A DNA stretch of 64,000 nt from the sequence record MK250028.1; one strand, given 5' to 3'. A program made the translations under genes and the position numbers. Positions 45,392 through 52,608 of this stretch are shown here, in pieces (position 1 is the first letter of the stretch; each line of letters opens with the position of its first letter). The notes below the pieces were generated by a model that worked only from the letters and a program-made list of their open reading frames with translations, had not been told where the DNA came from and made no database searches.

Positions 45392-45433
45392 AGTATATTT
45401 TATAAAGATATTTTATTTTCAAAATAATAAAAA

Positions 45434-45499
45434 ATAAACATCAAAATTGTGGTTCTAAATCTTACTGCTACTTACTAAGACTACAATTTTGATGTTTAT
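45434..45499 (-). terminator. Long terminator hairpin closing candidate ncRNA-1
   Basis: ATAAACATCAAAATTGT/ACAATTTTGATGTTTAT 17-bp stem with a T run on the minus strand. Confidence 0.75.
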
Positions 45500-46243
45500 A
45501 AAAGCAATCATTCATTATCCTGCAGCATCCATATTAGTATAAGTTTCATTGCAATAGAACTTTACAACTATAGTGATAATCCACTTATACATTCTTTTAC
45601 TCTAAAGTCTTTTATATAACTTTATCATACATAATATATGTACTGTCCATCAATAAAAGGTTCTTTATTTCATCATGGTTTTATATCGTATAAACAACCC
45701 TCTGTATATCACTGATTCATTTCTTTACATTTAGAAATCAGAGTCTTTAAGCCTCAACGTTTGGCTGTAACTATTATCCTCAACCATTACCAGATAATGT
45801 CATCTTGTTTTTGTGGTGCATCTCACATACCTCCTTTAATCATAAAACAAGCAAAACTACTAAGACAAATAACGTTTCTTAGAACTTCTACGAATTTACG
45901 CTCATATCAAATCATCATCTGATATAGACACCTAAATTAAGTGAATAAAGTTTACGACTCAATATAAAATTTTATATCTCAACCTTTATCAAAAACGATT
46001 CATTAAATTCTTTTAAGGAACTTATTTCTAATTAAATGAAGGATTCATTTAAAATAGGTTCTCCCGAAAACATGCGGTTTATCCTTACTCATTATAATTA
46101 TAATAAGCGTTGTTTATAGCACTCATTAGAATTCATTATGTATTATCTAACTCTCATTTATAATATTCATAATTTATATGATATTAAAAGCAAAATGTCT
46201 AATATCATATTATAAATTATTTGTCTCGTTAGATATTATCAAA

Positions 46244-46257
46244 ATTTCAAAGAACTC
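46244..46257 (-). promoter_or_regulatory. boxA-like antitermination element GAGTTCTTTGAAAT
   Basis: Exact 14-nt match to 52387-52400; resembles rRNA-leader boxA (GTTCTTTGAAA type). Confidence 0.65.
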
Positions 46258-46280
46258 TTCATTGTTATTTTATTAACAAT

Positions 46281-46292
46281 ACAAAGATACAC
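46281..46292 (-). promoter_or_regulatory. Bacteroidetes-type promoter TATCTTTG, copy 3 (drives ncRNA-1 region)
   Basis: GTGTATCTTTGT; the nearest downstream CDS starts about 890 nt away. Confidence 0.8.
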
Positions 46293-46342
46293 ATTCTTTT
46301 TTAATAAAAAAAATATTCTAAGAAAAAATTAAAAATATTTTT

Positions 46343-47143
46343 TTATCTTACAAAACATGTTGCATATCCATGTTCAACCTTAATAAATAATACTTCACCA
46401 TTTAACCACAATTTATCAAATGGTGTTTTATCACCATTTTCTTGCATATCTTTATGTTCATCAATAGCATATTTCTCAATGTCATCAATACTACCTTTAT
46501 AATAATTCTTTATGTTATCAGATTCAAGATATGCAATTCGCGACTTACATTCGTCAAGAAGTTCTTCAAATACAGGAACAGATTTATTACAAAATCTGTC
46601 ATACTCATTCTGAAAATTAATATTAGATGAACAAATACCATTTGTAATAATACGAGATACATTTTCAAGTTTCTCTAGATTATCAAGGTCTACATAAAAA
46701 TCATCGCATGTAATATCATTATCTTTATACATCACTATAGTATGAATTTTTGCATTCCATAATTCACACCATTTATTTGCTCCATCCTCTACAAGTTGTC
46801 CAAAATCATTATCATGAAAATCAAACATAATCATGAAATTCTTATCAACTGTAATATCATTGGTTTCATATGGATCACCTTTATACTTATGTCCATCATA
46901 AAGGCCTGTAAGATATGAAGAACGGCTTATCCTTAAAATCTCTTTCAAACAAAAATCCTTAATTTTTTTATATTCTTCGTCATTTAGATTATCTGTTCCA
47001 TCAAGTAAATCTAATACTGAGTCATAATATTTTTCTTCATTTTTTACATAGTCATAAGACATATCTACAAATGGCTTGCCGAACATACGAATTTCAGATT
47101 TATTCATATCTTCTTGCATCTTCTTAAGATCTATTTCTTTCAT
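46343..47143 (-). CDS. Hypothetical protein (266 aa)
   Basis: Track ORF, ends TAA. Confidence 0.8.
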   Translation of the reverse strand: MKEIDLKKMQEDMNKSEIRMFGKPFVDMSYDYVKNEEKYYDSVLDLLDGTDNLNDEEYKKIKDFCLKEILRISRSSYLTGLYDGHKYKGDPYETNDITVDKNFMIMFDFHDNDFGQLVEDGANKWCELWNAKIHTIVMYKDNDITCDDFYVDLDNLEKLENVSRIITNGICSSNINFQNEYDRFCNKSVPVFEELLDECKSRIAYLESDNIKNYYKGSIDDIEKYAIDEHKDMQENGDKTPFDKLWLNGEVLFIKVEHGYATCFVR

Positions 47144-47156
47144 ATTTCTTAATTAT

Positions 47157-48092
47157 TTACATTGTTCCATCATTAGGTTGCAAACACATAATTCCATGCT
47201 CTCGCCACATCTTAACCACTTTAGAAGAATCTTCCAATACAAACAATACATTATAATAAGGTTCAATATATTCCTTATATAAATTATATTTACAATCTGG
47301 ACCCTTTGTAAAATTCTTCAAAGGTCTCATTAACACCTTATCAACATTACCAATAAGGTTATTCTTCAACCAATCTTCTGTTGCATGTCTAATATCGTCT
47401 GTATCTTCTCTACCTGTCAATATAATAACATCCACTGATTTATCGGCAATATATGTATTAACAAGTTGGCAAAGTTGCTTACATGGTTTATCATCCCTCA
47501 TGCTATCAGCAGCACCATTACCATAAAATGGCCGACCTTGAAGATTAAAACAAAGTGTAGCATCCATATCTACAAGAATACAATTCTTCTTCGTTTCATC
47601 AAACTTCTTAAAGCTATTATATTGCTTATTATTAAGTTGTGTAGCAATAAAGTTTCTATATCGCCTATAAGTAGATTTGATAACGGATTCACCTATAGGA
47701 TTAGATCTAAATGAATCTCTTCTAATACATTCCTCTACCGATACATCAAAGAAATCCTTAAATTCCAATGTATAATGATACTCATTATGTGTCTCATTAT
47801 ACTTATCAATTCTATCTTGCATTTCTTTCCATCCCTTTGGATTCAGGTTCATATTATCCATAATGATATTCCAACCTTTTTTCATAGGTGATTTAAAAAA
47901 TGCATCTGTCATATCTTTAATAACAGAAAGTTTCTCACGTGATTCTACCCAATACTCACCGAACATGTTTCTAAGAGAATCCCAATTAATTCTAATTCTC
48001 TCAGTTGGTTTTTCCTTTACCCAATGTTCAGCGAATGTAGACTTACCAGACGCTTGAATACCTCTTGTCAATATAATTACCCTTTCTTTCAT
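47157..48092 (-). CDS. pseT: Polynucleotide 5'-kinase / 3'-phosphatase (T4 PseT-like)
   Basis: P-loop GIQASGKST, INWDSLRNM, VEECIRRD, HAD motif DMDAT, ILTGRE, LMRP, FVLED..VVKMWREHGIMCLQ. Confidence 0.92.
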   Translation of the reverse strand: MKERVIILTRGIQASGKSTFAEHWVKEKPTERIRINWDSLRNMFGEYWVESREKLSVIKDMTDAFFKSPMKKGWNIIMDNMNLNPKGWKEMQDRIDKYNETHNEYHYTLEFKDFFDVSVEECIRRDSFRSNPIGESVIKSTYRRYRNFIATQLNNKQYNSFKKFDETKKNCILVDMDATLCFNLQGRPFYGNGAADSMRDDKPCKQLCQLVNTYIADKSVDVIILTGREDTDDIRHATEDWLKNNLIGNVDKVLMRPLKNFTKGPDCKYNLYKEYIEPYYNVLFVLEDSSKVVKMWREHGIMCLQPNDGTM

Positions 48093-48110
48093 TATTACTA
48101 ATTAATATAA

Positions 48111-48647
48111 TTAAAATTCTATTCCAATACCTGCATACCAACTATATCTTGTTGCTGTCACTTGAATATTAAAATGTTTCATATTAAATACAACTGCTCC
48201 ACCATAATCAAAATCTTTAATTTGATCATCAACATTAAATTTATTATGAATACCATTACTATCTGTATGCCAATTATATCCATCTGTTGTACCAGTTGCA
48301 TCATATGCATAACCAACCATAGGAATAACTCGCAACCATTTTGTTATAGGTACCTGATAACCAACATGAAATGTTAACGCTTTATCATCATCCCATGTAT
48401 CTACTCTAACATCACTTCCATGTGAACTTGGCCAACCACCAAAATCTGCATATACACCATAGATCGTAGTAGACATTAATATTTGTTGAAGTCCTAAATC
48501 ATCTGAACATCCAATTCCACCAAAATGAAATCCAAAATTAATTTTTGTATTTGTTTCTTTGAAAATTTCTTTATAATTATTAGCATTTACAGTATTAATA
48601 CTCATAAATGTAAACATCATAATTAGTGTAAAAATAATTTTCTTCAT
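48111..48647 (-). CDS. Outer-membrane beta-barrel protein (178 aa)
   Basis: Sec signal MKKIIFTLIMMFTFMSINTVNA; alternating strands FHVGYQVPI, LRVIPMVGYAY, FDYGGAVVF; C-terminal WYAGIGIEF. Confidence 0.75.
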   Translation of the reverse strand: MKKIIFTLIMMFTFMSINTVNANNYKEIFKETNTKINFGFHFGGIGCSDDLGLQQILMSTTIYGVYADFGGWPSSHGSDVRVDTWDDDKALTFHVGYQVPITKWLRVIPMVGYAYDATGTTDGYNWHTDSNGIHNKFNVDDQIKDFDYGGAVVFNMKHFNIQVTATRYSWYAGIGIEF

Positions 48648-48691
48648 AATTTATATCTTTTAATTGTTTATTATTCTATTTAATTAACAAT

Positions 48692-48703
48692 ACAAAGATA
48701 CAT
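48692..48703 (-). promoter_or_regulatory. Bacteroidetes-type promoter TATCTTTG, copy 4
   Basis: ATGTATCTTTGT upstream of ATG 48647. Confidence 0.8.
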
Positions 48704-48842
48704 AATTTTTAGGAAAATAAAAAATTAATTATTATCAAATACTATATTTTCAACAAAATTAAGTTTCTTATAATTTCTATTCTTTGAATACTTATCGATT
48801 ATTTTTAAAAAATCGACCATAAATCTATAATCAAATTCTGGT

Positions 48843-49061
48843 TTATTCATCTTTTAACATCATTGCAAGAATAACAGATTTCATACATGTCATATATCCT
48901 TTAAGATACATATCTTTCAACATCAACCAAATTCTTTCAAATTCATCTGGTATCTTTTCACTTGTATCATCAGATATATTAGAGACACCGACAATAGTTT
49001 TAAGTTCTCGACGTGCTTGATAATCCGCCATTGCATTTAATTTATTCTTATTAAATTCCAT
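48843..49061 (-). CDS. Hypothetical protein (72 aa)
   Basis: Track ORF, ends TAA. Confidence 0.7.
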   Translation of the reverse strand: MEFNKNKLNAMADYQARRELKTIVGVSNISDDTSEKIPDEFERIWLMLKDMYLKGYMTCMKSVILAMMLKDE

Positions 49062-49064
49062 ATT

Positions 49065-49754
49065 TTATTTGGATTTTAGTCCCAAACAATATTCTTTATT
49101 AATTTTATCAATAAAAGAATTAATTCTAATTCTTAGTAATTCTGATTCTTCTTCAAATTCCTTAATTTTATCAATGTCTTTTTTAATATCATCTATATTA
49201 TGATTTAACAAATATTCATACGTATTAGGTTTAGATACTTTAAAATAATAAATATCTTCATTCATAATATTATTATGATTTAAAGCGCATGATAAATGAT
49301 AAGATTCCTCATTTGCAGATGAACCATGATAACCATATCCATCACTTTCAAAATATATACATAATGGTCCATAACTATAATGTCCACCTGGATATACAGT
49401 TGTTCTTAATGAGTTAATATGAAATGATTTACATATATTATATTTCTTATCTAAATAATCATTCAATAACTTATTAATACTCATCATTTGAAGGTCTAAT
49501 AATCTATCTAAATTTATATCATTATTCTTACTTATATATACACTGGAAACTTCTTTTACAACTGAGTCAATATCTAATTCATAATTCTCGTCTGTATATA
49601 AATGAAGAATACAAAGAAATAATCTATGTATATATTCTTTCTTATCGTAATTTATATATGCAGTTTTTAATTTTTCTACATAATCATCTGTCACCTTCTT
49701 ATTGATGTTATATTCGATATTCTTTATAAATTCTTTTTGCTCATTCTATGTCAT
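49065..49754 (-). CDS. Hypothetical protein (229 aa), TAG at codon 3
   Basis: Track GTG start extends to ATG ACA TAG AAT at 49754, 2 nt after the upstream TGA. Confidence 0.75.
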
Positions 49755-49756
49755 AA

Positions 49757-49954
49757 TCATTGCTCTTTTATTTTTCTTAAAATAAATTTAGGTTCTTGAT
49801 AATAAAAATAATCTATTGTTTTATCATCTATAATGTTCAAATTATATAATGCTTGTGAAAACCTAATATCCTTATATGTCGTAAGATACTTCTTTAATAT
49901 ATCTAATATTTCCATATTAGCATTGTATCTCTCAAATGTTTCTTTAGCTTCCAT
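49757..49954 (-). CDS. Hypothetical protein (65 aa)
   Basis: Track ORF with DIRFSQALYNL. Confidence 0.7.
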   Translation of the reverse strand: MEAKETFERYNANMEILDILKKYLTTYKDIRFSQALYNLNIIDDKTIDYFYYQEPKFILRKIKEQ

Positions 49955-50352
49955 TAGAATAACGGATTAATTTTTATCTCGTTTGTTTTACTATATTCTT
50001 GTACATCTAAATTCAATGTTTCATTTAGCCAATCAGCAATTAAATGTCTGTGACAAAATTCATCTGGTTTTTCAAAACAACATAAAGCACAATCTTTATT
50101 ACCTGTTATAAACTTTAATCTATCTATAAATAAAGTTGGTTCTTTAAATATAGATAAAACTTCAGCTTTATATCGTTTTCTAAACTCTTGATGATTGCTT
50201 CTACAATTATTCAATATATCTGGTGTAGGTGCGATACTTGCTAAGTTAACCCCTTTGAAATCATTTGGCGGATAACAACACACACCTATAGGAATAATAT
50301 TATTCTTTATAAGATTATTAATATTACCAAAATAGCTTGTATATATTTTCAT
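49954..50352 (-). CDS. DUF488-family protein
   Basis: MKIYTSYFG start, LASIAPT, ALCCFEKPDEFCHRHLIADWL. Confidence 0.85.
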   Translation of the reverse strand: MKIYTSYFGNINNLIKNNIIPIGVCCYPPNDFKGVNLASIAPTPDILNNCRSNHQEFRKRYKAEVLSIFKEPTLFIDRLKFITGNKDCALCCFEKPDEFCHRHLIADWLNETLNLDVQEYSKTNEIKINPLF

Positions 50353-50561
50353 ACACGAAATAAACTATATATTTCATTATAAGTTTCTTTTGATATTGGA
50401 TATGATACTATATTACAATATTCTCCGAAATTCTGATCAACATCTACCATATAACCTTGTTTATATGTATCATAATAGCATCTTACTATATGTGAAACAT
50501 TAACTAAACCTGAAGATGTATCAATAAATTTATTATAATTTTTATTTTTTAACTTAATCAT
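50349..50561 (-). CDS. Hypothetical protein (70 aa)
   Basis: Likely start ATG 50561 (MIKLKNK); the longer track start overlaps the divergent gene. Confidence 0.65.
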   Translation of the reverse strand: MIKLKNKNYNKFIDTSSGLVNVSHIVRCYYDTYKQGYMVDVDQNFGEYCNIVSYPISKETYNEIYSLFRV

Positions 50562-50620
50562 AATACTAAAACTATATAACTTAATGTTTATATAATATAT
50601 AAATGTTTTTGTTTTATTTA

Positions 50621-50944
50621 ATGGGAGGTTTTGTTTATTTAATTTGCGATCCTGAATAGAATTGTTATAAAATAGGTGTAACAAGGAATATAGCATAGAA
50701 TAGATTAAAGTAGTTATAGACTGGTAACTCATCAAAATTACATATGGTTTCAAATATATATTGTGAATATCCTTTTAGACTTGAAACAATGTTACATAAT
50801 AAATTCAATCATAAACGTGCAAATGGTGAATGGTTCTATTTAGAATAGGAAGATATAAGTAATTTTAAAACTATATGTGAAGAAACAATATAGATGATTA
50901 ATGTAATGAAAGATAATCCATTCTTTAGTAAAGATTTAAAATGA
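50621..50944 (+). CDS. T5orf172 / GIY-YIG-superfamily nuclease-like protein (107 aa)
   Basis: Absent from the track; GFVYLI..YKIGVT..RLKQLQTGN..LE..LH..F..KR..GEWF; six TAG and no CAA/CAG. Confidence 0.88.
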
Positions 50945-50990
50945 ATAAAGGTGATATAAGAATAATAAAACTTATATCGCCTTTATTTTT
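50944..50990. terminator. Bidirectional terminator
   Basis: AATAAAGGTGATATAAG/CTTATATCGCCTTTATT stem. Confidence 0.85.
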
Positions 50991-51264
50991 AATTATCTTT
51001 CTTTTCTAATTCCTTATTAATATAATCCATATCTTCATCTGTTAAATCGCCAAATAATGTGAATAAATCTTTATTAATAAGTCCATATCTCATAAGATAT
51101 GCTAATGTCATTCTTACAGCATAATCTGCAATATCATAAGTTGTTGTAACTTCTAAATTTTGTAAATCTGGATTATTACCAACTACATTAGAAACTTTAT
51201 CAACAATCTTATCACATGTTTTTTTCATTGAATTTAATTCATTATTTGTTAATTTGGTACTCAT
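50989..51264 (-). CDS. Hypothetical protein (91 aa)
   Basis: Likely start ATG 51264 (MSTKLTNNE); the longer track start runs into the terminator. Confidence 0.7.
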   Translation of the reverse strand: MSTKLTNNELNSMKKTCDKIVDKVSNVVGNNPDLQNLEVTTTYDIADYAVRMTLAYLMRYGLINKDLFTLFGDLTDEDMDYINKELEKKDN

Positions 51265-51329
51265 AATATCATTAAATAATTTAATTATTATATTACAACG
51301 ATATGCATAAAGTTTAGAAATAAAAAATG

Positions 51330-51361
51330 AGTTATTAGACTTATGCACAATCTAATAACTC
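51330..51361 (-). terminator. Intrinsic terminator closing candidate ncRNA-2
   Basis: GAGTTATTAGA/TCTAATAACTC stem followed by ATTTTTT on the minus strand. Confidence 0.8.
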
Positions 51362-52386
51362 ACAAACACTTTATTCTAAATTTATTATATTTACATCTTA
51401 TTTAAAGATGTCCCTCATGTTGTTATTTGTACGAACATAAGTTTCTGCCTCTTATGATTCACTTTAACGTTTGCCCGTTATATAATGAATGTTCATACTG
51501 AACTTCGTTATGTCCATAAGGACAAATGGCTGAGAACTTGACCAACACCGACTCTCAATGCTGTAACGTTGGAGTTACATGTTCACACAACTCTTATTTC
51601 TAAGAGGTTGAGAGCATACCCACGACTTTTGTAAAAAATCGTAAACTCTTACTTGATAGGTTTCATAGAAATTCATTTCATACCAACTTCCTTGGAAGGA
51701 TTCAATGTGTCCCCACATTTAGCACGATACTACTCTTACTATTCTCATGTCTTTCCTTGCGGTACTCGAATCATGTCTACATATTACAGTAGAATAAGGG
51801 TATTTTAACCACCAAGTGTCGCACACTTTTGCTTATACATAATTATATGTTAAATAAAATAATTTCCAATATTATTATTCTTATTATATATTCTTTAGAC
51901 TTGAAAGACGAGGTGCGACCAATAGCATTTCTTCCTTTTGAGAAGAACCCACTAAATCGCCTTTCTGAAATTTCGTTACACCAATGTAACCATATTTCTA
52001 CTCTTATAACTTACCTATTGTTTTTCAATAGTAATCTTACCATTTCTGAAACAAGTTACCAGCTTGTATAAATTATTTGGTTTATAATTTATATAAGATT
52101 CATTATAACAATTAATATTAGCACTGGGAATTGGTATTCCGATCACTAAATATCCATAAACTTAAACTCCTATTGTATTACTACTCACATCAGTTGTCTA
52201 TCAAACTTCCAATGTATATAAACTTCATCTCAGGAATTATCCCATCAATTTCCCATTTATACAAGCACTTACTAAGTTTGGTTTTCTGTAGAATGCTCAT
52301 TATTCATAAACATCGATAAACATGTCTACTGTTTACCTTTATCACATCACTGCTTTATCCTTACCCCACCGAAACCATGGGTTTAT

Positions 52387-52400
52387 ATTTCAAAGAACTC
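52387..52400 (-). promoter_or_regulatory. boxA-like antitermination element GAGTTCTTTGAAAT
   Basis: Exact copy of 46244-46257, about 30 nt downstream of the predicted start site. Confidence 0.65.
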
Positions 52401-52437
52401 ATCTTGAATAAAATAAATTCATTCAAATTTTATACTT

Positions 52438-52466
52438 ATTATATAATCAATAATTTAAAAAGTCTA
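52438..52466 (-). promoter_or_regulatory. Sigma70-like promoter TAGACT-N17-TATAAT (P2 of ncRNA-2)
   Basis: -35 at 52461-52466, -10 at 52438-52443. Confidence 0.7.
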
Positions 52467-52553
52467 TATTTTAATAGATATATTTCAAAATTTTTATTGT
52501 TAACTGTTATTAAAAATATTAAATATTAAAATCTTTTTAAACTTGATTCTAAA

Positions 52554-52582
52554 TTTATATATTAAATTAAATAGAAAGTCTA
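52554..52582 (-). promoter_or_regulatory. Sigma70-like promoter TAGACT-N17-TATAAA (P1 of ncRNA-2)
   Basis: -35 at 52577-52582, -10 at 52554-52559. Confidence 0.6.
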
Positions 52583-52608
52583 TATTTCAATACAATATTT
52601 TTAAAAAA

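What the first reader, a model, noticed from the sequence alone, without database searches (positions are those of the whole stretch)
46070..52400. Two ORF-free units share an rRNA-operon-like leader: promoter(s), identical boxA-like 14-mer and a GTAAGGATAAA motif
Seen: GAGTTCTTTGAAAT lies shortly after the predicted starts of both non-coding units (46244-46257, 52387-52400) and I saw it nowhere else; both also contain GTAAGGATAAA (near 46080 and 52360); unit 2 has tandem promoters. Known: boxA recruits NusB/S10/NusG antitermination for untranslated rRNA transcripts. Inference: the phage borrows host rRNA antitermination to mass-produce two large RNAs, possibly a paired ncRNA system. This is the best candidate for an undescribed system here.
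Basis: partly seen in the sequence, partly recalled or inferred. Interest (0 to 1): 0.85.

Follow-up and report, generated by a model that had tools for sequence, protein, structure and literature searches.

The report
Phage GOLLD RNA with host rRNA leader
Two gene-free stretches of a giant gut phage (a Lak megaphage of Prevotella) make abundant large structured RNAs. One is a divergent member of the known cage-forming GOLLD RNA family and the other is unclassified. Each starts with a copy of the short signal that the host places at the head of its ribosomal RNA operons.

Summary
GAGTTCTTTGAAAT lies at 46244-46257 and 52387-52400 on the minus (sense) strand and nowhere else in the 543 kb phage genome. 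Its 13-base core occurs four times, always at the head of stable-RNA genes: the two units and two sites in the tRNA array.

The same element, (A)GAGTTCTTTGAAA(G/T), sits about 40 nt after the promoter and about 230 nt before the 16S gene in Prevotella, Segatella and Bacteroides rRNA operons. The boxA reading is therefore supported at sequence level. Its function is inferred.

Unit 2 is not an undescribed system. It is a divergent GOLLD RNA (Rfam RF02032: 62 bits, E 1e-15, below the curated cut-off). Rumen and gut relatives link it to the family: they score 77-112 bits, lie inside tRNA islands, and some carry a tRNA in the linker. Forty of 67 core base pairs covary.

Unit 1 (about 0.8 kb) is also structured and ends in a covarying terminator. 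It matches no Rfam family and was found only in Lak phages.

In metatranscriptomes from three studies, RNA contigs of about unit length cover both units but not the 5 kb of genes between them.

GTAAGGATAAA is not significant, and I found no sign that the two RNAs pair with each other.

The parts
46274..46294 (-). Unit 1 promoter block with a Bacteroidetes-type -7 element (TATCTTTG at 46282-46289).
   Evidence: Conserved between Lak-B and Lak-A. It is nearly identical to the promoter at the head of the phage tRNA array (Lak-B5 119612). Promoter function is inferred from the known TAnnTTTG consensus.
46244..46257 (-). Unit 1 boxA-like leader element, GAGTTCTTTGAAAT.
   Evidence: Lak-A has GTGTTCTTTGAAAT. 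It matches the host rrn leader element.
46151..46243 (-). Unit 1 hypervariable AT-rich 5' segment, with large insertions and deletions between Lak clades.
   Evidence: Alignments. No BLAST match to Lak-A.
45520..46150 (-). Unit 1 conserved structured core. It is an unclassified large ncRNA.
   Evidence: 82.7% identical to Lak-A. RNAalifold predicts 236 pairs for the whole unit, 12 with compensatory changes against 0-3 in shifted controls. Whole hairpins are replaced by different hairpins. No Rfam family matches. RNA-run contigs of 697-845 nt lie here.
45429..45497 (-). Unit 1 intrinsic terminator: a long hairpin followed by a T run.
   Evidence: Sequence. Six compensatory pairs in the hairpin between Lak-B and Lak-A.
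52439..52606 (-). Two direct repeats upstream of unit 2. Each carries the sigma-70-like motif TATAGACTTT-N13-TATATAA (TATAGACTTT at 52459-52468 and 52575-52584).
   Evidence: family D1. The motif recurs upstream of tRNA genes at Lak-B5 126747, 133627, 416058 and 416800. Function is inferred.
52424..52431 (-). Weak -7-like element (AAAATTTG), 23 nt upstream of the unit 2 boxA.
   Evidence: Read from the sequence. Lak-A has TTAATTTG at the matching distance. This is weak and inferred.
52387..52400 (-). Unit 2 boxA-like leader element, GAGTTCTTTGAAAT. Sequence conservation between Lak-A and Lak-B starts sharply here.
   Evidence: The element is kept at the 5' end of the GOLLD-like RNA in the more distant relatives L178 and L180.
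51966..52386 (-). Unit 2 5' domain, the variable half of the GOLLD-like RNA.
   Evidence: 85% identical to Lak-A. nhmmer aligns it in relatives down to roughly u2 position 45-60. GOLLD is described as having a less conserved 5' region (PMC12286853).
51903..51965 (-). Hairpin matching positions 1-62 of the Rfam GOLLD model, with the conserved UCAAAAG loop.
   Evidence: cmscan alignments. 100% identical between Lak-A and Lak-B.
51835..51902 (-). AT-rich linker. It cannot be aligned between Lak clades. Relatives carry a tRNA at this position.
   Evidence: tRNA-Ser or tRNA-Trp sits inside the unit in L189, L192, L196 and L179. tRNAs in the GOLLD linker are described in PMC12286853.
51528..51834 (-). 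Conserved GOLLD 3' core, from AAGCAAAAGU to the terminal UUCUCAGCC hairpin. It includes the long-range pseudoknot.
   Evidence: Rfam RF02032 scores 62.4 and 64.5 bits (E 1e-15 and 3e-16). 98.7% identical to Lak-A. In a 15-sequence alignment, 40 of 67 pairs show compensatory changes, or 42 by my count against 5-11 in shifted controls. The true 3' end was set from alignments A4 and A5.
51425..51527 (-). Conserved 3' tail beyond the GOLLD core. It was seen only in Lak clades.
   Evidence: 91-93% identical to Lak-A. Relatives end at or near the core. The X1 RNA contig begins at 51443.
51322..51361 (-). Unit 2 terminator-like hairpin plus T run, after a non-conserved spacer.
   Evidence: Sequence. 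A hairpin plus T run is kept with different sequence in Lak-A.
47157..48092 (-). Polynucleotide kinase/phosphatase gene lying between the two RNA genes. This is context, not shown to be part of the system.
   Evidence: phrog_505, E 1.4e-58. No RNA contigs lie on it.

Best explanation
The window comes from a Prevotella Lak-B megaphage. The two ORF-free units are genes for large, stable, structured non-coding RNAs read from the minus strand.

Unit 2 spans about 52400 to 51425, about 980 nt. It is a divergent GOLLD RNA with a variable 5' domain, an AT-rich linker and a highly conserved 3' core with its pseudoknot. By analogy with solved GOLLD it probably self-assembles into a multimeric RNA cage.

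Unit 1 spans about 46257 to 45500, about 0.75-0.8 kb. It is a second structured RNA of unknown class, found only in Lak phages.

Both units begin, 18-24 nt after a TTTG-type -7 element, with a copy of the boxA-type element of the host's rRNA-operon leader. So do the head of the phage's main tRNA array and an internal site in it.

The likely mechanism is as follows. Once transcribed, the element binds host NusB-S10. Together with NusG, NusA and SuhB this converts host RNA polymerase into the rrn-type processive complex. That complex resists Rho and pauses, so long untranslated phage RNAs are completed at a high rate and fold co-transcriptionally.

What is shown: the motif's identity with the host leader, its restriction to stable-RNA genes, GOLLD homology and covariation, and accumulation of both RNAs. 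What is inferred: Nus-factor binding, antitermination, and cage formation.
For: Phage identity. The window is 100% identical to Lak-B5 over both units.

Motif. Of 100 Bacteroidales rrn loci with a leader, 51 have GTTCTTTGAAA 169-314 nt before the 16S pattern and about 35-45 nt after the TAnnTTTG promoter. The commonest context is AAGAGTTCTTTGAAAGATTT, and some Bacteroides carry the exact 14-mer. A second boxA-like element, GATCTTTGACATATTG, lies in the 16S-23S spacer of 22 of 29 loci, as expected for rrn boxA. In 247 kb of related phage loci the element occurs 18 times on the sense strand and never on the antisense strand. It sits at GOLLD 5' ends or ahead of tRNA-Met plus GOLLD. L184 also copies the host-type rrn promoter. 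The phage has no nusB or nusG of its own, whereas Bacteroides has both. The role of boxA, NusB/E and Rho is taken from PMC12360218.

GOLLD. Rfam hits of 62.4 and 64.5 bits span the full model. Bridging relatives score 77-112 bits. They lie in tRNA islands, and some hold a tRNA in the linker. Covariation. The 3' core is 98.7% conserved against 66-88% for neighbouring protein genes.

Unit 1. Structure.

Expression. RNA-library contigs from three studies lie only on the two units and have unit-like lengths: 697-845 nt for unit 1 and 862-971 nt for unit 2. A DNA-like run covers the genes as well. The original Lak paper reported highly expressed large intergenic regions without identifying them.
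Against: No experiment shows that Bacteroidales NusB/S10 binds this element. rrn antitermination has not been characterised in this phylum.

Unit 1 and the tRNA-array head share a whole promoter-leader cassette, so part of the motif's recurrence could be duplication rather than selection on boxA itself. In the most divergent relatives the element is not directly at the GOLLD 5' end. It lies hundreds of nucleotides upstream or was not found in the fetched DNA.

The Rfam GOLLD score is below the curated gathering score of 150 bits, and window-wide scans missed the match. Lak's GOLLD is not next to tRNAs.

Logan contigs cannot give strand, ends or level. The X1 unit 1 contig ends about 20 nt short of boxA, so the leader may be trimmed off or may simply differ in that strain.
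Confidence: 0.75

Rival explanations
1. The shared 14-mer is a leader element with a function other than antitermination. It could be an RNase processing site, a binding site for a phage protein, or simply part of a promoter-leader cassette that was duplicated within the phage genome.
For: Unit 1 and the first tRNA-array promoter share about 45 nt of promoter plus leader. In the literature boxA can also enhance Rho termination in some contexts (PMC12360218). The X1 unit 1 contig stops short of the motif.
Against: Unit 2 and the internal tRNA site have unrelated upstream sequence yet keep the motif. The motif equals the host rrn leader element at the same distance from the promoter. It is kept in distant relatives whose flanks differ.
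Confidence: 0.15
2. Units 1 and 2 form a paired, co-acting RNA system that interacts by base pairing or co-assembly.
For: Both have the same leader, are 5 kb apart in all Lak clades, and both accumulate in the same RNA libraries.
Against: They share no homology beyond the leader. The shared 11-mer is at chance level and not conserved. The whole-length duplex energy of -214.6 kcal/mol falls within the range of 12 shuffles, -198 to -242. GOLLD relatives outside the Lak A/B/C clades show no unit 1 homologue in the DNA fetched.
Confidence: 0.1
3. The units are not RNA genes. They are decayed protein genes, genes read in another genetic code, or self-splicing introns or mobile elements.
For: The phage recodes TAG. 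A group I intron-like element exists elsewhere in the genome. A conserved 13-codon frame with an SD-like motif lies in unit 1 (45780-45821).
Against: There is no long frame under table 11 or TAG=Q. Substitutions are compensatory in helices. The minus strand folds much better than the plus strand, -228.7 against -174.5 kcal/mol. There is no intron-family hit and there are no flanking exons. Each unit ends in its own terminator.
Confidence: 0.03

Closest known systems
GOLLD RNA (Rfam RF02032; Weinberg et al. 2009; cryo-EM 14-mer nanocage, Kretsch et al. 2025, PMC12286853)
   Same: Unit 2 shares the architecture: a variable 5' domain, a linker and a conserved 3' domain. It shares the conserved loops UCAAAAG, AAGCAAAAGU, CGCAAGG and UUCUCAG, and the long-range pseudoknot. 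It is phage-encoded. Its relatives lie after tRNA-Met in tRNA islands, some with a tRNA in the linker. It is abundant as RNA.
   Different: It scores 62-65 bits, below the 150-bit gathering score. It is AT-rich and has a reduced first hairpin after the pseudoknot. It has an extra conserved tail of about 100 nt. In Lak it stands alone, about 60 kb from the nearest tRNA. It has its own rrn-type boxA leader and terminator. The host phylum is Bacteroidota. It was not found in the held part of the published GOLLD alignment (that file is truncated).
rrn operon leader boxA / NusB-S10 antitermination (E. coli rrn; lambda nut boxA)
   Same: A 12-14 nt U-rich element lies promoter-proximally on the sense strand of long untranslated transcripts. 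It is identical at 13-14 of 14 positions to the element in the host's own rrn leaders.
   Different: It lies on phage tRNA and large-ncRNA operons, not on rRNA. No boxB-like hairpin or N-like protein was identified. Antitermination in Bacteroidota is uncharacterised. I recall the E. coli consensus (GCUCUUUAACAA) and the Firmicute form (GUUCUUUGAAAA) from memory.
ROOL RNA (RF03087)
   Same: It is also a large, ornate, phage-borne RNA found near tRNA islands that forms cages. It is therefore a natural candidate for unit 1.
   Different: Neither unit matched it at E up to 10 when each was scanned alone.
[quoted passage not shown] 2019, PMC6784885; preprint 10.1101/356790)
   Same: [quoted passage not shown]
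   Different: That work did not say what these regions are. Here one is assigned to GOLLD and the shared leader to the host rrn boxA.

Membership tests
GOLLD RNA (RF02032) | Statistically significant match of sequence plus structure to the family covariance model over its full length. | tested here: met
   Lak-B: 62.4 bits, E 1.4e-15, model 1-416 of 416. Lak-A: 64.5 bits, E 3.2e-16. Whole genome: E 1.6e-16.
GOLLD RNA (RF02032) | Score at or above Rfam's curated gathering threshold of 150 bits. | tested here: not met
   Lak scores 62-65 bits. Even the bridging relatives reach only 77-112 bits. cmscan also misplaced the last hairpin in Lak, which lowers the score. This is a curation cut-off, not a structural feature.
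GOLLD RNA (RF02032) | Conserved 3'-domain helices and the long-range pseudoknot maintained by compensatory changes. | tested here: met
   Nine of 10 pseudoknot pairs are formed in Lak, six of them differing from the consensus pair. In 15 sequences, 40 of 67 pairs show double changes, or 42 against 5-11 in shifted controls. RNAalifold cannot model the pseudoknot itself.
GOLLD RNA (RF02032) | Architecture: more than 800 nt, a less conserved 5' region, a linker, and a universally conserved 3' region. | tested here: met
   The unit is about 980 nt. Identity to Lak-A is 85% for the 5' domain, unalignable for the linker, and 98.7% for the 3' core. The description comes from PMC12286853.
GOLLD RNA (RF02032) | Phage or prophage location near tRNA islands, with a tRNA sometimes inside the linker. 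| tested here: inconclusive
   Met in the relatives: they lie after tRNA-Met, and tRNA-Ser or tRNA-Trp sits in the linker of L189, L192, L196 and L179. In Lak itself the RNA is phage-borne, but the window holds no tRNA and the nearest one is about 60 kb away.
GOLLD RNA (RF02032) | Self-assembly into a homo-oligomeric (14-mer) cage. | not testable with these tools
   This needs in vitro transcription followed by mass photometry or cryo-EM.
rrn-type boxA antitermination leader | Sequence matches the boxA element of the host's own rRNA operon leader. | tested here: met
   13-14 of 14 positions are identical. 51 of 100 Bacteroidales leaders carry GTTCTTTGAAA, and Segatella copri has AAGAGTTCTTTGAAAG. 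A spacer copy, GATCTTTGACA, occurs in 22 of 29 loci.
rrn-type boxA antitermination leader | Promoter-proximal position on the sense strand at the head of long untranslated transcripts. | tested here: met
   It lies 18-24 nt after a TTTG -7 element. All 5 genome copies are in the sense orientation of tRNA or ncRNA genes. In relatives it occurs 18 times sense and 0 times antisense.
rrn-type boxA antitermination leader | Binding by NusB-S10 and suppression of Rho-dependent or intrinsic termination. | not testable with these tools
   Only the availability of host factors was checked: nusB and nusG are found in Bacteroides and not in the phage.
ROOL RNA (RF03087), tmRNA, group I and group II introns, as candidates for unit 1 | Match to the family covariance model. 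| tested here: not met
   No such hit at E up to 10 on the Lak-B or Lak-A-type unit 1 scanned alone. ARAGORN found no tmRNA or tRNA.

The most novel reading that the evidence does not exclude
Unit 1 may be a new class of large phage RNA that Lak megaphages make alongside GOLLD under the same hijacked rRNA-type transcription programme. More broadly, giant gut phages may treat GOLLD-type RNAs as 'phage rRNA-like' products. Host-rrn promoter and boxA mimicry would then be the general way Bacteroidales megaphages drive their tRNA and GOLLD arrays. That would link GOLLD biology to the translation apparatus and to stop-codon recoding, because a suppressor tRNA(CUA) lies just downstream of GOLLD in the relatives.
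Probability: 0.35. Interest if true: 0.7.

Novelty: new variant of a known kind. Interest (0 to 1): 0.6.

Why it matters
GOLLD is one of the largest bacterial or phage RNAs of unknown function and was recently shown to form RNA-only cages. This work places a divergent GOLLD in the largest known human and animal gut phages. It also identifies at least one of the "highly expressed intergenic regions" that the Lak discovery paper left unexplained.

The rrn-type boxA leader is a concrete, testable clue to how such RNAs are produced: host RNA polymerase switched into its rRNA mode, which resists Rho. The same signal heads the phage tRNA arrays. This groups GOLLD with the translation-related RNA set of a phage that recodes a stop codon.

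Standard Rfam annotation at the gathering threshold misses the whole subfamily, so GOLLD may be more widespread in Bacteroidota phages than is currently recorded. Unit 1 gives a second abundant large RNA for structural study.

Tried and rejected
- Window-wide Rfam scans found nothing, both at gathering and at E-value threshold over 7.4 kb. The GOLLD hit appeared only when unit 2 was scanned alone.
- No tRNA or tmRNA lies in the window.
- Coding under TAG=Q was rejected.
- Homology between unit 1 and unit 2, and paralogues elsewhere in the genome, were sought with blastn and nhmmer. None were found beyond the leader.
- My early impression that GAGUACCGCAAGGAAAG resembles 23S rRNA was dropped. 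That stretch is a GOLLD CGCAAGG hairpin, and no rRNA model matched.
- Unit 1 homologues outside Lak were sought with an nhmmer profile on 28 GOLLD-bearing metagenome loci and on the genome, an 18-mer scan of viral contigs and phage-record BLAST. Only the Lak A, B and C clades have it.
- The unit 1 by unit 2 duplex energy fell within the range of shuffled controls. This is a crude test that gives no support, and it is not evidence against pairing (one search timed out).
- GTAAGGATAAA as a second shared signal is at chance level.
- No phage-encoded nusB or nusG was found.
- One of the 29 metagenome hits, L185, was a chance 19-mer match and was removed.
- The literature search returned no paper combining GOLLD with Lak, megaphage or Prevotella. 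The held supplements of the GOLLD cryo-EM paper contain no Lak or MK2500 accessions, but the alignment file is truncated.

Full report
**What the window is.** Both units are 99.6-100% identical to Prevotella phage Lak-B genomes (MK250020-28) and have diverged homologues in Lak-A and Lak-C. Genes run on the minus strand. An opposite-strand GIY-YIG-like ORF needs six TAG=Q readings, which fits the known code 15 of Lak phages. I fetched the complete 543,529-nt Lak-B5 record for genome-wide checks.

**Checking the observation.** GAGTTCTTTGAAAT is at 46244-46257 and 52387-52400 on the minus strand. These are its only two copies in the genome, against 0.02 expected.
- The 13-mer core occurs four times against 0.11-0.19 expected, and GTTCTTTGAAA five times against 0.8-1.5 expected.
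- Every copy lies in the sense orientation of stable-RNA genes. Two are tandem promoter-plus-motif cassettes at the head of the main tRNA array (119.6-119.8 kb). One lies between tRNA-Ile and tRNA-Lys (124.3 kb). The other two are the units.
It is altered in Lak-A and absent from host leaders.
- Neither unit has an ORF under table 11 or TAG=Q.

**The host comparison.** I fetched 120 Bacteroidales loci holding the 5' end of 16S rRNA, including complete Segatella (Prevotella) copri genomes.
- Among the 100 loci with at least 500 nt upstream, GAGTTCTTTGA, GTTCTTTGAAA and their neighbours are among the commonest 11-mers.
- 51 loci have exact GTTCTTTGAAA 169-314 nt (median 229) before the 16S pattern and about 35-45 nt after the TAnnTTTG promoter. 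The usual context is AAGAGTTCTTTGAAAGATTT. A few Bacteroides carry the exact phage 14-mer.
- The head of the phage tRNA array matches some Bacteroides leaders over 20 nt, GTTCTTTGAAATATTGATAA.
- The 16S-23S spacer holds a second, related element, GATCTTTGACATATTG, in 22 of 29 loci. A leader copy plus a spacer copy is the classical rrn boxA arrangement.
- The phage encodes no nusB or nusG, while Bacteroides has both.
- In E. coli, boxA RNA recruits NusB/NusE to build the Rho-resistant rrn complex (PMC12360218). That this happens here is inferred.

**Unit 2 is a GOLLD RNA.**
- Conservation between Lak-A and Lak-B starts abruptly at the boxA motif and ends near 51425. The upstream region and the terminator region are diverged.
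- The minus strand folds far better than the plus strand: -228.7 kcal/mol (z = -2.9) against -174.5 kcal/mol.
- Scanned alone, unit 2 matches Rfam GOLLD (RF02032) over the full model at 62.4 bits, E 1.4e-15. Lak-A gives 64.5 bits. The conserved loops are in place. The long pseudoknot forms 9 of 10 pairs, six of them differing from the consensus pair.
- The score is under the 150-bit gathering cut-off, and larger scans filtered the match out. This explains why it is unannotated.
- A metagenome scan with a 19-mer from the core returned 28 true homologues. The divergent ones, from rumen and gut with 35-43% GC, score 77-112 bits against GOLLD. They lie inside sense-oriented tRNA islands after tRNA-Met. 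Several carry a tRNA exactly in the linker. These are published GOLLD hallmarks (PMC12286853).
- Aligning them shows that the Lak core really extends to the UUCUCAGCC hairpin at 51537-51528.
- 40 of 67 predicted pairs show compensatory changes. My own count is 42, against 5-11 in shifted controls.
Neighbouring protein genes are 66-88% identical.

**Unit 1.**
- The promoter block and boxA are conserved. They are followed by a hypervariable AT-rich stretch, a core of about 630 nt (82.7% identical to Lak-A) and a long terminator hairpin.
- RNAalifold predicts 236 pairs, 12 of them compensatory, against 0-3 in shifted controls. Several hairpins are swapped for different hairpins. With only two clades this is moderate evidence.
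- No Rfam family matches either clade's copy. No homologue was found outside Lak. Its class is unknown.

**Expression.**
- Words from unit 2 are held by metatranscriptome runs from at least three studies. Words from unit 1 are held by runs from two studies.
- I laid the contigs on 45851-51850. In three RNA libraries from three studies, contigs lie on unit 1 and unit 2 only. The 5 kb of protein genes between them is empty apart from a few short, low-identity fragments. A DNA-like run covers the genes as well.
If the X1 unit 2 contig is colinear with the window, it extrapolates to about 51442-52411, which is the conserved block including boxA.
- Contigs cannot give strand, exact ends or level.

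**The leader across relatives.**
- L178 and L180, an intermediate clade, keep AAGAAAGTGTTCTTTGAAAT right at the GOLLD 5' end.
- In more distant phages the element lies ahead of the tRNA-Met plus GOLLD block or heads a tRNA array.
- In L184 it follows a copy of the host rrn-type promoter GTACCTTTGCA.
- Across 247 kb the element is sense 18 times and antisense never.

**Verdict.** The boxA reading passes its sequence-level tests, but its function remains inferred. The claim of a new paired system is not upheld. Unit 2 is a new, sub-threshold variant of GOLLD, and no link between the two RNAs beyond their shared leader and neighbourhood was found. Unit 1 remains a candidate new RNA class. No searched paper combines GOLLD with Lak or megaphages.

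Noticed in passing
window 52459-52468 and 52575-52584 (minus strand); Lak-B5 126747, 133627, 416058, 416800 (+) and 169398 (-): A sigma-70-like motif, TATAGACTTT-N13-TATATAA/TATAAT, occurs about 7 times in the genome. Most copies lie just upstream of tRNA genes, and two lie upstream of unit 2. It differs from the Bacteroidetes TAnnTTTG promoter type and may be a separate promoter class for stable-RNA genes.
   Followed up: partly
window 50603-50944 (+): A GIY-YIG / T5orf172-like endonuclease ORF (phrog_8130, phrog_681) lies on the opposite strand. It needs six in-frame TAG=Q readings, in a neighbourhood whose other genes need none or one.
   Followed up: partly
window 47157-48092 (-): A polynucleotide kinase/phosphatase gene (phrog_505, E 1e-58), an RNA-repair-type enzyme, lies between the two large RNA genes.
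   Followed up: no
window 45780-45821 (-), inside unit 1: A 13-codon frame (MHHKNKMTLSGNG) preceded by AAAGGAGG is kept in Lak-A with partly synonymous changes. The same bases are also predicted to form a covarying hairpin, so the frame is probably not translated.
   Followed up: partly
L027:6077-6251 (Lak-B5 about 286.1 kb): Another ORF-free region of about 1 kb holds a group I intron-like element (RF00028, 40.5 bits, E 1.7e-8, below the gathering score).
   Followed up: partly
L179:2227-2605 and L196:1-199: In GOLLD-bearing rumen phage relatives, a tmRNA gene sits in the same tRNA island upstream of tRNA-Met plus GOLLD. A suppressor tRNA(CUA) lies a few kb downstream in many of them. ARAGORN found no tmRNA in Lak-B5.
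   Followed up: partly
Lak-B5 340103 and 407870: ARAGORN predicts a tRNA with anticodon UUA (which would read TAA) as well as the expected tRNA(CUA) for the TAG=Q recoding.
   Followed up: no
Control genome: The GOLLD model gave a sub-threshold match in the Bacteroides thetaiotaomicron control genome. This may be a prophage copy of the same divergent subfamily.
   Followed up: no
Lak-B5 168223-168898: An ORF-free, very AT-rich 676-nt region lies downstream of a TATAGACTTT-type motif on the minus strand. It may be another non-coding transcript.
   Followed up: no
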